A stretch of DNA of 64,000 bases from positions 26,102,001 to 26,166,000 of the forward strand of contig OZ249438.1 in the NCBI GenBank assembly GCA_965235115.1, read 5' to 3'. Below the pieces are notes generated by a model that saw only the letters and a list, made by a program, of their open reading frames with translations, had not been told where the DNA came from and did not search any database. Made by a program: the position numbers and the translations under genes. The DNA is from Laetmonice hystrix (Eukaryota). Positions 33,181-36,100 of the stretch are shown here, in pieces (the stretch's first letter is position 1; each line of letters opens with the position of its first letter).

Positions 33181-36100
33181 CTACTCATGACTTCCCAGAG
33201 CCTGGGTCACCGGTTTAGGCTTGGCTATACGGACGTGTTGGCCGCGTGGTAGGGATATTATTAGGTCTGGTAGGTTGACTGGTGGAGCCTGGGAGACTCT
33301 CGGAGACCGGCGCCCACTGCCAAACCGCGGGGGCCAGGGGCTGGACGGGCGGGTGCTCTCAATTCCAGGCCCTGTGTATAGCTCAGACGATTCGAAACGA
33401 ATAGAAGGGCACGGAGATGGTTCGGGTGGCGGGGGGTCCTGGTAATGGGATGTGGGTCTTGGGACTGCATACTTTGCCACAGCAGGGTTAACTTTTTGAC
33501 GCGTCTTCTTCTTACGTTGTCGGGTCTTGCAAATGCACAGCAGACCTATAGTGACTGTGAGTGAAATTAGCAGTACCATGAGCACAACAGGAACGAGAAT
33601 TGCTACAATTTTATCCCTGCTACTCTCTGTGGTCGGTTGTAGCACTTCTGCTGGCTGGGGTTTGTACCCGGCAGGTGTGATGGTTTGCTCCTCAGTTGGG
33701 TGAGCATTTGAGAAGTCCATCTGACTTCCATTTTCTGTGAGATTGTCATGGGTAGAGATATAACCTATGGCACCCTTTTCAGTTCGGCCAGGTTCACCTG
33801 TAGGTATACTGGTGAGGAACAGAGTAGGGTTGTCCCTATAATTCGTGCTTGTTTCACCGTTCAGATCGTTTACTTTTTCCTCTGCGAGAAGGGCTTGATC
33901 AACAACTGCGCCCACACTAGTATCTGATGAATTATAGCCATCTGTTTTATCTCCTTTTACCCTCCATACTGTTCCGTCATACACCCAATCAGTTCTGTTC
34001 CAAATTATTTGTAAAATCCCACTCAGGTCCTTCCCTAGTTCTTTACGATCACTGTTACTCCATGATCCAGACTGCCACTTAAACGTCATTTTGTTGTAGA
34101 TGAGGGTTAAATTCAGAGCATACCATGGTGCTATCGTCGATGTCTCGGCCACAAGACTAGTCTCTAGCTTCCAAGTCAATCTATTCCATACCCAAACAGT
34201 GTGATTGAATGCAACGGCTAGTGTCTCATTACCTCCAGAACTTCCCTCTCTCATTATTGACCAACTACTCCCATGAAAAGACCACATGATGCCATCTATG
34301 AAAACACCAAACAGGTCAGCCTTGAGGAGTTTTCTGTGTCTGTCTGCTGTCACGGTTACCTCCGGCACAATCGTGGCACTTGTCCTGTTTAACAGCCACC
34401 ATGTACCATTTACAACAACCACGGGAAAATAGTAGGCTAATTCTTGCTTGATCATATCGTTTTCAACCACCCAGTCTCTTTCCGTGGATCTCCACATAGT
34501 CAAATTCCATATTATTCCCACTGTAGTATTTTCAAAGGAGGTCTCACTATCAAAGTCGTTCAACTTAACCCAAACCGTTCTGTTCAACACCCAGAGTTTG
34601 CCATCTTTGACAATAGTCAATTGATCACCAAAATGTTTTAGAAACGCACGTTCCGGCATTCTTGTTGCACCATCTTGAAGCATTTTGATCGAACCATTTA
34701 TCCATATCCACGTATGTCCATTGAAGGCTATCCTTAGTGGACTATTTCCAACAGCTGCCAAACTACTATTAATCGTTAGTTCCTCTGTCTTGTTACAACC
34801 CTTTGCACCACAGACCCAAAGTAGAGAATTGATTCCGATCACTAACACAGATGGACGAAGGAAGTTTAGATCGTAATCCAGCTTTTCCTCGTTCACATAC
34901 CAGGCCGAGTGATGGAGAGCCCAAGCTTGGTCGGTCCACCACAGTTTCAAAGTCACATCGTTCTGATGGATGGCTCTTCTCTGTCTGCGTCTCTCCACGC
35001 TCTCCTCATAAAGCAGGAACCACCGGGTGCCCTGCCACACCCAATACCTTCCTTCCGACATAACACCTGGCATACCTTCATCACCAACCAGGACCTTTGA
35101 GTCCGCCCACTTACTCTCAGCAAAGTCAAAAGTCCAGAAGTGGTCGTGCCAAGATACACCTAATGAGTGTGATAGTAGCAACTCTTCCACCGGTGTCTCC
35201 TGTGAGGCATGAGCGGCAATGATACTGCTGTTTTGTAAGGTCCACTGAGAACCGTTGATTCTGACTGATAACGAAGAGTTACTTACGGAAATGTCCTCCG
35301 TCCAATAGTAGTGACGGTCTATCTTCCATACAGAGGTCCCGTTGAAAATCCACCATGTGCCGCCAATGAAGAAGAAAATCTCTTCTGAAAAGAAAGGTGT
35401 GTTTTTTCCGGATGCCGTGCGAAAAACCCATGATTCCCCATTCCATTCCCATGAATTTCCGAACGACAGCACGGAAATGCGCGTTTCCACTGTACACACA
35501 GCAGCATACAACGATTGTTCAAGTTCTGTTTTAACACGCCAGCCTGAGCCATTCCATACCCAAAGAGTGGCATGCCGACATATTGCAAACCTTGGATAAT
35601 GTAGGGCCTCGCTGTCATACAAATCGTAGGCTTTCCAGCCATAGGTTGTCCACGTCCAGTATGCATTATTCCATACTAAAATAAATCCGTCGTCAGAAAA
35701 TGAAACATTAATGCCATACGTTCTGCCTAACCATTTCATCACAGATCTATCATTTTGAGAAATATTTCTTTCCAAAAATCCATTTTTAGTCCAAGACCAT
35801 GCTGTTTGATTAAAAATAACGATTAGAGAATAATCCCAACTATCAACCTCCGGCACTTCTCTGACAGTTTTGTACCAGAACCAAACTGTATCATTAAGAC
35901 ACCATATTTCATCCAGAAGCATCAGACAAAGGGATCTGTTCGACACACTTAGCAGTACTGACATACTGTCGTTCTTATTCCACAACGTCCCATTCCAGGA
36001 CCAGAAAGTGTTTATCCAATAAACCCCAATTTCCTTCCTGGGCATCATAATGTCTTTCCCGGTGACGGCAGTATCGCCGGTGGCACATGGGTCACCATCA

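What the first reader, a model, noticed from the sequence alone, without database searches (positions are those of the whole stretch)
33955..36030. About 20 copies of an unrecognised Trp-rich repeat in an IgGFc-binding-domain receptor
About 690 aa of the ectodomain consist of roughly 34-aa units with consensus hhhNGxxWxWNGxxW (e.g. YWINTFWSWNGTLW, HATLWVWNGSGW, GNSWEWNGESW, SEGRYWVWQGTRW, WNRTDWVYDGTVW). The units are diverged at DNA level, nearly Cys-free and rich in N-glycosylation sequons. They follow a PF17517-type domain and a DNDCDGLIDE..DDDSDGVVDED metal-binding-like pair, and precede a TM helix and a Pro-rich tail with a YAVP motif. FCGBP-like proteins normally continue with vWD/TIL modules, not this. 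Aromatic beta-hairpin arrays suggest glycan or surface binding, so this may be a new adhesion or pattern-recognition receptor type.
Basis: partly seen in the sequence, partly recalled or inferred. Interest (0 to 1): 0.8.

Follow-up and report, generated by a model that had tools for sequence, protein, structure and literature searches.

The report
Unrecognised tryptophan-rich beta repeat receptor
An invertebrate gene encodes a roughly 1,600-residue single-pass membrane glycoprotein whose outer part holds 20 copies of a ~35-residue tryptophan-rich beta unit that matches no described family and was found in only one other species; the repeat is real and new, but what it does is untested.

Summary
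On the minus strand, a 1,357-codon open last exon (33181-37254) carries 20 diverged ~35-aa units at ORF residues 407-1104. This matches the reported coordinates.

Each unit reads L-x-V-h-W / N-G-T / h-W-x-W / N-G-x-x / W, followed by a variable linker. AlphaFold predicts three strands per unit. The conserved residues all fall on one sheet face.

The repeat matches no Pfam family or solved-structure sequence. It has no paralogue in the 627-Mb genome. An exhaustive search of 1.84 billion proteins found one orthologue, with 24 units.

Structure models are low-confidence (pLDDT 44-58). Their weak matches are all beta-propellers, but none is significant, so the fold stays open.

The inferred gene order is:
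- signal peptide
- FCGBP-N1-type head (PF17517)
- two DxDxDG loops
- Ser/Thr linker
- 10 units
- a conserved RxRR site
- 10 units
- TM helix
- conserved Pro-rich tail

A paralogue has a mucin stalk where this gene has the array. Orthologue conservation is concentrated in the unit core, and unit number varies. I therefore favour a glycan-covered structural scaffold, with possible binding in the first ten units, over a lectin array. The lectin reading is not excluded. No RNA data were available.

The parts
41067..41127 (-). Inferred exon 1. It starts at an ATG and encodes a 20-residue hydrophobic signal peptide (MYAALLRVIAGLLVTAATVS...). The donor is T|GTAAGT.
   Evidence: This is the only upstream Met followed by a hydrophobic run that splices in frame to exon 2. 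It rests on GT/AG rules and reading frame only, with no RNA support.
38497..38736 (-). Inferred exon 2. It encodes the N-terminal part of the head (LADNKGTRFVLAFMEN...). The acceptor is TTTCAG|G.
37860..38146 (-). Inferred exon 3, covering PF17517 profile positions 1-76.
   Evidence: (E 1.8e-11).
37478..37679 (-). Inferred exon 4, covering PF17517 profile positions 74-149.
   Evidence: (61.4 bits, window 37473-37691).
33181..37211 (-). Last exon (about 1,343 codons plus the stop). It encodes the end of the head, the whole repeat array, the TM helix and the tail. The inferred full protein is about 1,606 aa.
   Evidence: The frame is open over 1,357 codons. The public contigs of the sample show 32 SNPs and no indel or stop.
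36703..37209 (-). C-terminal part of the IgGFc_binding (FCGBP-N1 type) head domain, profile positions 144-297.
   Evidence: 52.7 bits, cut-off 25.6.
36517..36627 (-). Pair of acidic DxDxDG loops (FDNDCDGLIDEE ... DDDSDGVVDED). They are conserved in the orthologue and in the mucin-stalk paralogue.
   Evidence: The Pfam MopE motif scores only 10.8 bits against a cut-off of 27.
36040..36516 (-). Thr/Ser/Asp/Pro-rich linker, probably unstructured (ORF residues 247-405).
   Evidence: T 16%, S 13%, D 12%, P 9%. Identity to the orthologue is 23% with many gaps.
34999..36036 (-). Array 1: units 1-10 of the Trp-rich repeat (ORF residues 407-752). The orthologue also has ten units here.
   Evidence: Orthologue identity is 45%. 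AF2 predicts three strands per unit.
34975..34992 (-). Polybasic RRRQRR stretch. It holds the only R-x-[KR]-R site in the ORF and lies in the one gap of the array. The orthologue has GKRHRR at the same place.
   Evidence: Cleavage itself is inferred, not shown.
33943..34956 (-). Array 2: units 11-20 (ORF residues 767-1104). The orthologue has 14 units here.
   Evidence: Orthologue identity is 34%.
33610..33942 (-). Juxtamembrane Thr/Ser/Glu-rich linker.
   Evidence: 20% identity.
33529..33609 (-). Transmembrane helix, followed by KTRQRKKKTRQK (positive-inside, so type I topology).
   Evidence: (mean Kyte-Doolittle hydropathy 3.07 over 19 residues).
33184..33528 (-). Cytoplasmic tail of 115 aa. 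Several blocks are identical in the orthologue (QKVNPA.A.YAVPRPTSH, SPCPS, GRRSPRVSQAPPV.LPDLIISLP).
   Evidence: A5; 61% identity, the most conserved region together with the head.

Best explanation
The stretch is the main body of the ectodomain of a real, intact, single-copy gene. The gene encodes a type I membrane glycoprotein of about 1,606 aa.

The stretch consists of 20 old, diverged copies of a previously undescribed ~35-aa unit. Each unit is a three-stranded antiparallel beta-meander: strand 1 L-x-V-h-W, an N-G-T turn, strand 2 h-W-x-W, an N-G-x-x turn, and strand 3 starting with W. A poorly conserved linker of 10-25 aa follows.

In the strand register predicted by AlphaFold, all conserved residues (L3, V5, W7, W12, W14, W21) lie on one face of the sheet and form a Trp ladder. 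The turns often carry N-glycosylation sequons.

My preferred mechanism is inferred, not shown:
- Successive sheets pack on one another like propeller blades or solenoid rungs.
- This gives a stiff, glycan-covered scaffold. It occupies the place that a mucin stalk occupies in a paralogue.
- The scaffold holds the PF17517 head with its acidic DxDxDG loops away from the membrane.
- It can be cut by a proprotein convertase at a conserved RxRR site between units 10 and 11.
- It is coupled through the TM helix to a strongly conserved Pro/Tyr-containing tail that recruits cytoplasmic partners.
- Any ligand binding by the array itself is most likely in the better-conserved, fixed-number first ten units.
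For: Real gene:
- The frame is open for 1,357 codons.
- Canonical splice sites join a signal peptide and three PF17517 exons to it.
- 32 SNPs, with no indel or stop, are seen in contigs of the sample. pN/pS is about 0.5. No nonsynonymous change hits a conserved Trp, and none falls in the head.
- An orthologue in another species has the same domain order.

Real repeat: motif enrichment, 20 units in register, and genome-wide specificity of the unit profile.

Beta-meander: both AF2 models give strand-strand-strand for each unit. Strand pLDDT is about 70-75 in the five-unit model.

One-sided core: column statistics combined with the AF2 register.

Scaffold reading:
- Orthologue identity is 66-73% for the core, 22-43% for the other face and 23-32% for the linkers. 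The baseline for disordered linkers is 20-23%.
- No polar residue is conserved across units apart from the turn residues.
- Unit number is 20 in this species and 24 in the orthologue, and all the difference is in array 2.
- The paralogue at C3:35.28 Mb has the same head and DxDxDG pair, then a ~330-aa Thr/Pro/Ser stalk and a TM helix.

Blade-like packing: the named Foldseek matches in PDB, Swiss-Prot and BFVD and the family-annotated ESM Atlas rows are nearly all beta-propellers, and propellers dominate the VIA-align list.

Cleavage site: a single R-x-[KR]-R in the ORF, conserved in position.

Tail: 61% identity with fully identical blocks.
Against: - The tertiary structure is not established. 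AF2 mean pLDDT is 44.5 (10 units) and 57.5 (5 units), and pTM is 0.28 and 0.43.
- Fold matches are below significance: TM <= 0.26 in Foldseek, best VIA Z 4.1, best Atlas TM 0.46.
- No conserved fourth strand exists in the linker, since no linker column is more than 47% hydrophobic. This is unusual for propeller blades.
- Array 1 is clearly more conserved than a pure spacer would need (turns 58%, second face 43%), so a binding role is not excluded.
- No RNA evidence could be obtained.
- Glycosylation, cleavage and signalling are all inferred from motifs.
- pN/pS rests on 32 SNPs from one sample.
Confidence: 0.5

Rival explanations
1. Lectin or pattern-recognition array. The exposed Trp platforms of the 20 units bind glycans or microbial surfaces multivalently by CH-pi stacking. 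The tail then signals or drives uptake.
For: - The content of Trp and other aromatic residues is very high.
- The weak structural neighbours include propeller lectins: RSL, the Kordia fucose lectin 6htn, BambL, AOL and PVL.
- The protein is a receptor-like single-pass protein with a conserved tail.
- Array 1 is conserved beyond its core.
Against: - No polar or charged ligand-binding residue is conserved across units. Propeller lectins repeat such residues in each site; this point rests on my own knowledge.
- The conserved aromatic face is what one expects to be buried.
- Surface positions of array 2 evolve nearly as fast as disordered linkers.
- Unit number is not fixed.
- Twelve of the 40 turn positions carry sequons, so the protein's own glycans may cover them.
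- All structural matches are non-significant.
Confidence: 0.25
2. Closed beta-propeller domains. On this reading the array is a very remote member of a known propeller superfamily of the small-blade tectonin/tachylectin type, or a 10-bladed Vps10/sortilin-like ring. For example, it could form two 10-bladed or four 5-bladed rings. This is a claim about structure and is compatible with either function above.
For: - Fold-search hits in six libraries are dominated by propellers.
- Ten units lie on each side of the basic site, and the first ten are fixed in both species.
- Both sheet faces are at least partly hydrophobic.
- A unit length of 30-47 aa is near that reported for tectonin blades (33-38 aa, my own knowledge).
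Against: - Neither AF2 model closes into a ring (pTM 0.28 and 0.43, Foldseek TM about 0.1-0.25).
- Only three strands per unit are predicted, and there is no conserved fourth strand.
- Array 2 has 10 units here and 14 in the orthologue, which is hard to fit to one fixed ring.
- No sequence match to any propeller Pfam family appears at E<=10 in more than one of 11 segments.
- There is no evidence that the two halves are block duplicates (permutation p = 0.43).
Confidence: 0.3
3. Beads on a string. Each unit is an autonomous mini-domain: a three-stranded sheet stabilised by its own cross-strand Trp cluster. The analogy is to WW domains and designed tryptophan-zipper hairpins. The units are joined by flexible linkers.
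For: - The W-x-W, four-residue turn, W spacing equals that of trpzip peptides (my own knowledge). AF2 pairs W14 with W21 across the hairpin.
- Linkers have low pLDDT, variable length and baseline conservation.
- Unit number varies freely.
Against: - The second sheet face is 59-75% hydrophobic at three positions, which suggests burial against a neighbour.
- AF2 gives some inter-unit packing (pTM 0.43; VIA aligns about 100 residues over three or more blades at 3.7-5.4 A).
- There is no Pfam WW match.
Confidence: 0.2
4. The ORF is not a functional protein. It would be a chance ORF, a pseudogene or an assembly artefact.
For: No RNA run was found. The two orthologue haplotigs each show one break in the ORF.
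Against: - A frame of 1,357 codons without a stop is present.
- The splice structure is shared with a paralogue.
- The orthologue has 34-61% identity region by region, with core-specific conservation.
- The breaks in the two orthologue haplotigs lie at different places, and each is intact in the other copy.
- The sample's contigs show no indels.
Confidence: 0.02

Closest known systems
Small-blade beta-propeller lectins (tectonins, tachylectin-1; also RSL, BambL, AAL-type fucose lectins)
   Same: Both have tandem units of about 35-45 aa built of antiparallel beta-meanders with conserved Trp, and both are extracellular. These proteins are among the weak structural neighbours of the AF2 model.
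   Different: There is no sequence match. The only 'Tectonin' hit in this genome is a translated minisatellite. The model shows three strands per unit rather than four, and no closed ring. No conserved polar sugar-binding residues are present, and unit number varies between species.
Membrane mucin-like paralogue in the same genome (G000:C3:35285619-35287493)
   Same: The paralogue has the same PF17517 exon pattern, the same DNDCDG...DDDGDG pair, a single TM helix and type I topology.
   Different: The paralogue has a ~330-aa Thr/Pro/Ser stalk where the window gene has about 160 aa of linker plus the 700-aa Trp-repeat array. Its tail is short and unrelated.
FCGBP (IgGFc-binding protein) of vertebrate mucus
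   Same: Both have the N-terminal FCGBP-N1 / PF17517 domain. [quoted passage not shown]
   Different: FCGBP continues with many vWD/C8/TIL assemblies and is secreted. This protein has none of those modules and is membrane-anchored.
WW domains and designed tryptophan-zipper hairpins
   Same: Both are ~35-aa three-stranded sheets or hairpins held by cross-strand aromatic pairs, with the spacing W-x-W, four-residue turn, W.
   Different: There is no Pfam WW match. The Trp positions differ from the WW signature. WW domains are intracellular and not arrayed twenty-fold, and trpzips are synthetic. This is an analogy from my own knowledge, not a tested relationship.
Vps10/sortilin ten-bladed propeller receptors
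   Same: Both are type I receptors with ten beta units per block. Sortilin and SorLA appear among the weak fold matches.
   Different: Vps10 blades are about 60-70 aa with Asp-box motifs, and the domain is about 700 aa for ten blades. Here ten units take about 345 aa and lack the S-x-D-x-G-x-T-W signature. No Pfam match was found.

Membership tests
IgGFc_binding (PF17517) - applies to the head, not the repeat | Profile match above Pfam's gathering score | tested here: met
   One search gives 52.7 and 44.3 bits against a cut-off of 25.6. One search finds three exons covering profile positions 1-76, 74-149 and 144-297.
FCGBP / gel-forming-mucin architecture | vWD, C8 and TIL modules after the N-terminal domain | tested here: not met
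   One search finds no such Pfam family in the 1,357-aa exon at E<=1.
Known beta-propeller repeat families (Tectonin/Hyd_WA, Kelch, WD40, PQQ, Reg_prop, BNR/Sortilin-Vps10, hemopexin, FG-GAP) | Sequence-profile match of the units to the family model | tested here: not met
   E<=1; E<=10, 11 five-unit segments. Only Beta-prop_WDR75_2nd matched, at E 0.011 in 1 of 11 segments. No family recurred.
Known beta-propeller repeat families | Closed ring of four-stranded blades in a confident model that superposes on a solved propeller | tested here: inconclusive
   The models have pLDDT 44.5 and 57.5. Foldseek TM is <= 0.26. The best VIA Z is 4.1, below the tool's noise level of 7-8. The best Atlas TM is 0.46. 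Three strands per unit are predicted.
Cell-wall / choline-binding and glucan-binding hairpin repeats (CW_binding_1) and WG/KWG repeats | Sequence-profile match | tested here: not met
   Searches give no hit. In AFDB clusters only weak 3Di matches appear, to 'WG repeat' and glucosyltransferase entries (TM 0.16-0.20).
WW domain (PF00397) | Profile match with the W...W...P signature | tested here: not met
   Searches give no hit.
Thrombospondin type-1-like Trp ladders / C-mannosylation substrates | W-x-x-W/C motifs and the six-Cys pattern | tested here: not met
   One search finds no W-x-x-[WC] among 57 Trp in the array, and only 6 Cys (three intra-unit pairs).
MopE-type Cu-binding motif (PF11617) - applies to the DNDCDG pair | Profile match above the cut-off | tested here: not met
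   One search gives 10.8 bits against a cut-off of 27. The loops fit only a generic DxDxDG acidic pattern.
Proprotein-convertase (furin-type) substrates | R-x-[KR]-R motif in an exposed extracellular segment | tested here: met
   One search finds a single site, RQRR|A, at ORF residues 757-760. One search shows KRHRR at the aligned place in the orthologue.
Proprotein-convertase (furin-type) substrates | Actual cleavage of the protein | not testable with these tools
   This needs protein chemistry.

The most novel reading that the evidence does not exclude
The unit is a new extracellular mini-fold. It would be a natural tryptophan-zipper-like three-stranded sheet, stabilised partly by its own turn N-glycans. 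The twenty-fold array would make this protein the founding member of a new class of multivalent surface or glycan-recognition receptors in spiralian invertebrates.
Probability: 0.15. Interest if true: 0.75.

Novelty: new variant of a known kind. Interest (0 to 1): 0.5.

Why it matters
This is a clean example of a lineage-restricted repeat family that no database describes. It sits in a receptor-like protein whose head and cytoplasmic tail are both well conserved.

If the unit proves to be a new fold or a new binding module, it would add a building block to the known set of extracellular repeats. It would also offer a natural Trp-ladder beta scaffold of interest to protein designers.

If it is only a stiff stalk, it shows how a folded, glycosylated beta array can take the place that a mucin stalk holds in a related receptor. 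In either case the PF17517 head still has no known function, even in human FCGBP. This membrane-anchored form with a signalling-type tail is a tractable context in which to study it.

Tried and rejected
- Self-BLASTP of the ORF gave no internal hits.
- Tandem Repeats Finder and DNA repeat search found no array. They found only a 26-nt three-copy family encoding G-T-W-W....
- The word-indexed protein search was run three times, on the array, the whole ORF and the tail. All returned nothing. This is partly explained by the tool's length filter and choice of cluster representatives, so it is weak negative evidence.
- The ESM Atlas search by features gave nothing usable.
- PDB sequence searches with the half-array and single-unit profiles gave only noise.
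- Metagenome scans with orthologue alignments found no relative.
- The orthologue's DNA could not be fetched because the file is too large. No dN/dS between species could therefore be computed.
- Two searches for RNA runs found only DNA-type contigs of one sample.
- I tested whether units 1-10 and 11-20 are a block duplication. Unit i is no more similar to unit i+10 than to other units (p = 0.43), so I rejected the idea.
- The enhanced-aromatic-sequon idea (an aromatic residue just before a glycosylated Asn in turns) gave only modest enrichment: 7 of 24 sequons against a 16% background. I do not claim it.
- The viral envelope-glycoprotein idea (Trp-rich, furin site, TM) was rejected. The region is predicted all-beta, the BFVD hits are again WD/Kelch-type and weak, and the gene shares introns and its head with host paralogues.
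- A comparison with a tectonin from this genome was abandoned, because the only PF19193 hit is a translated minisatellite.
- Complex prediction was not used. I make no firm claim that two chains bind, and the monomer models are too poor for a useful result.
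Full report
**Observation**

The reported coordinates lie inside one long open reading frame on the minus strand, 33181..37254 (1,357 codons). Residues 409-1100 of this frame correspond to 33955-36030. They contain 8.2% Trp, 0.9% Cys and 24 N-x-S/T sequons.

The hairpin motif W-x-[WFYVIL]-x4-W occurs 11 times there. Shuffles that keep the composition give 1.56 +/- 1.19, with a maximum of 6 in 2,000 trials.

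I built a profile from the motif and iterated it. With inspection of two weak copies, it places 20 units at ORF residues 407-1104, with start-to-start spacing of 30-47 residues and a mean of 35.4. All 44 units from this protein and its orthologue align in register (A3).

Used against the whole 627-Mb genome in six frames, the 33-position unit profile finds 15 units of this gene at E<1 and nothing else. A five-unit profile likewise finds only this gene. The units are too diverged for self-BLASTP, and the DNA shows no tandem repeat.

**The unit**

Column statistics over the 44 units give the following pattern:
- Position 3 is L/I/F (89% hydrophobic).
- Position 5 is V/I/L (95%).
- Position 7 is W/I/F (82%).
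- Positions 8-10 are N-G-T.
- Position 12 is W in 43 of 44 units.
- Position 14 is W/L/F (95%).
- Positions 15-17 are N-G-T.
- Position 21 is W in 33 of 43 units (98% hydrophobic).
- A linker follows in which no column exceeds 47% hydrophobic residues.

Both AlphaFold models predict three strands per unit and no regular fourth strand. In the five-unit model the strands reach pLDDT of about 70-75. Position 14 pairs with 21 across a four-residue turn, and positions 3, 5 and 7 pair with 14, 12 and 10.

All conserved residues therefore lie on one face of the sheet. The other face (positions 6, 11 and 13) is 59-75% hydrophobic but much less conserved.

Twelve of the 24 sequons sit exactly in the two turns. 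No W-x-x-W/C motif occurs. The six Cys residues form three within-unit pairs that the orthologue keeps.

**The gene**

GT/AG sites and reading frame give a five-exon model. No RNA supports it.
- Exon 1 (41127-41067) encodes a hydrophobic signal peptide with a GTAAGT donor.
- Exons 2-4 (38736-38497, 38146-37860, 37679-37478) and the start of exon 5 (37211 onward) encode the head.

The protein is about 1,606 aa. PF17517 (IgGFc_binding) is matched over its full length across exons 3-5, above the curated cut-off.

After the head come these parts, in order:
- Two acidic DxDxDG loops.
- A Thr/Ser/Asp/Pro linker of about 160 residues.
- Units 1-10.
- The stretch RRRQRR, which contains the only R-x-[KR]-R site in the ORF.
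- Units 11-20.
- A Thr/Ser-rich juxtamembrane segment.
- A TM helix followed by a Lys/Arg cluster.
- A 115-residue Pro-rich tail.

**Relatives**

An exhaustive phmmer search of 1.84 billion representative proteins with the array found two clusters. Both come from one ENA assembly, ERZ26222911. They are the two halves of one orthologous gene, seen on two haplotigs. Each haplotig has one break in the frame, at a different place, and the other copy is intact there. The orthologue is therefore probably whole.

The orthologue has the same order of parts, but with 10 + 14 units.

| Region | Identity to orthologue |
|---|---|
| Head | 57% |
| First linker | 23% |
| Array 1 | 45% |
| Array 2 | 34% |
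| Juxtamembrane linker | 20% |
| TM helix | 52% |
| Tail | 61% |

Within the arrays, identity depends on position class:
- Six core positions: 73% in array 1 and 66% in array 2.
- Second face: 43% and 22%.
- Turns: 58% and 37%.
- Inter-unit linkers: 32% and 23%.

No paralogue of the array exists in this genome. The head does have paralogues. One of them, 9 Mb away on the same chromosome, has the same exon pattern and the same DxDxDG pair. It then has a ~330-residue Thr/Pro/Ser mucin-like stalk, a TM helix and a short unrelated tail.

Earlier notes of this scan call the genome spiralian (mollusc-, annelid- or nemertean-like). I did not test that.

**Polymorphism**

Contigs of three public runs of one sample cover the exon with 32 single-base differences and no indel or stop. 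Twenty are nonsynonymous and twelve synonymous, giving pN/pS of about 0.48. In the array the counts are 13 and 6, giving about 0.57.

None of the nonsynonymous changes alters a conserved Trp, and none falls in the head. The numbers are small and come from one sample. They fit mild purifying selection with a fast-evolving surface.

**Is the repeat known?**

- Pfam gives nothing in the array at E<=1 for the whole exon.
- At E<=10, no family is hit by more than one of 11 five-unit segments from the two species.
- Profiles of the half-array and of the single unit find nothing in PDB sequences.
- The ESM Atlas search by features is blank.

I looked for that and did not find it.

**Fold**

Two AlphaFold jobs were available:
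- Ten units with five rows gave pLDDT 44.5 and pTM 0.28.
- Five units with eleven non-overlapping rows, drawn from both arrays of both species, gave pLDDT 57.5 and pTM 0.43.

The fold searches gave these results:
- Foldseek against PDB, Swiss-Prot models and viral models returns lists made up almost wholly of beta-propellers. They include RSL and other fucose lectins, hemopexin domains, BamB, Ycf48, Kelch, WD40 and sortilin. The AFDB-cluster list is more mixed, and most of its entries are unnamed.
- Foldseek E-values are about 1e-3 or weaker, TM is 0.1-0.26, and rmsd is about 15 A.
- VIA-align gives at best Z 4.1 (6htn, a three-blade fucose lectin, 101 residues at 3.7 A). This is below the noise level the tool itself states.
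- The ESM Atlas gives TM 0.38-0.46 to Reg_prop, Sortilin-Vps10 and WD40 clusters.

The local geometry is thus blade-like, and AlphaFold packs neighbouring sheets roughly as propeller blades. No closed ring is predicted and no match is significant. The fold is open. Three possibilities remain: stacked sheets (open or closed), or autonomous mini-sheets on flexible linkers. A test for block duplication of ten units was negative (p = 0.43).

**How it most likely works**

Shown:
- The domain order.
- The repeat and its one-sided conserved core.
- The predicted beta-meander.
- The pattern of conservation.
- The variable unit number.
- The conserved basic site.
- The conserved tail.
- The mucin-stalk paralogue.

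Inferred: the array is mainly a folded, N-glycan-covered scaffold that takes the place of a mucin stalk and presents the PF17517 head. The reasons are as follows.
- What is conserved between species is the hydrophobic core.
- Surface and linker positions of array 2 drift at nearly the rate of disordered segments.
- Unit number changes only in array 2.
- No polar residue is conserved across units, as one would expect for repeated sugar sites.

Array 1 has a fixed ten units and more surface conservation, so it may carry a specific binding surface.

The single conserved R-x-R-R site, in the only gap of the array, suggests cutting by a proprotein convertase in the secretory pathway. Whether the fragments stay together or the outer part is shed is unknown.

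The tail has identical blocks around a Tyr (YAVP), Pro-rich stretches and an RRSPRVSQAPP...LPDLIISLP block. This implies cytoplasmic partners. I could not identify a known motif with confidence.

I give this scaffold-centred reading about 0.5. The lectin or pattern-recognition reading gets about 0.25. The structural rivals (closed propellers about 0.3, beads about 0.2) cut across both functions.

**Comparison with known families**

The head is a member of PF17517. Its function is unknown even in human FCGBP, and the domain also occurs in gliding bacteria (PMC11796319). The protein is not FCGBP-like beyond that, since it has no vWD or TIL modules.

The array works most like small-blade propeller lectins or other beta-meander repeats. 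It fails every sequence membership test I could run, and the structural test is inconclusive. The resemblance to WW domains and tryptophan zippers is an analogy from my own knowledge of their Trp spacing, not a tested relationship.

**Verdict**

This is a real and previously undescribed repeat family in a real, narrowly distributed receptor-like gene. Its function and fold are unresolved. I rate it a new variant of a known kind (extracellular beta-repeat arrays of single-pass receptors), with moderate interest.

Noticed in passing
G000:C3:35285619-35287493 (L018 2120-3994, minus strand): A paralogue has the same PF17517 exon pattern and the same DNDCDG...DDDGDG pair. It is followed by a ~330-aa Thr/Pro/Ser mucin-like stalk, a TM helix and a short tail. 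It looks like a membrane mucin with an FCGBP-N1 head.
   Followed up: partly
G000:C4:40261883-40337346: A tandem cluster of at least seven PF17517 (IgGFc_binding) ORFs of 260-530 aa, each holding the whole domain in one exon. The window gene, by contrast, splits the domain over three exons.
   Followed up: no
G000:C8:16435670-16436098 (L019 1347-2169): A minisatellite with a 63-nt period translates in two frames to repeated 21-aa peptides. It scores above the curated cut-off of Pfam Tectonin (PF19193). This is a false positive worth knowing about in six-frame family scans.
   Followed up: yes
window 34975-34992: The only R-x-[KR]-R site of the 1,357-aa exon lies exactly in the one gap of the repeat array. 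Its position is conserved in the orthologue (RRRQRR against GKRHRR).
   Followed up: partly
window 36517-37254: None of the 32 SNPs seen in the sample's contigs falls in the 246 head codons of this exon, where about 6 would be expected if SNPs were spread evenly. The head appears more constrained than the array.
   Followed up: partly
window 43881-44601 (minus strand): ORFs resembling a Nudix-type hydrolase (…ELCAGIVDKD…EEVLEETGYKV…) lie upstream. They probably mark the next gene and bound the 5' end of the receptor gene.
   Followed up: no
orthologue contigs of ENA ERZ26222911 (proteins P0001/P0004 and P0003/P0002): The two haplotigs each break the orthologous ORF once, at different positions, and the other copy is intact there. 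The breaks are more likely assembly indels or haplotype-specific lesions than a dead gene.
   Followed up: partly
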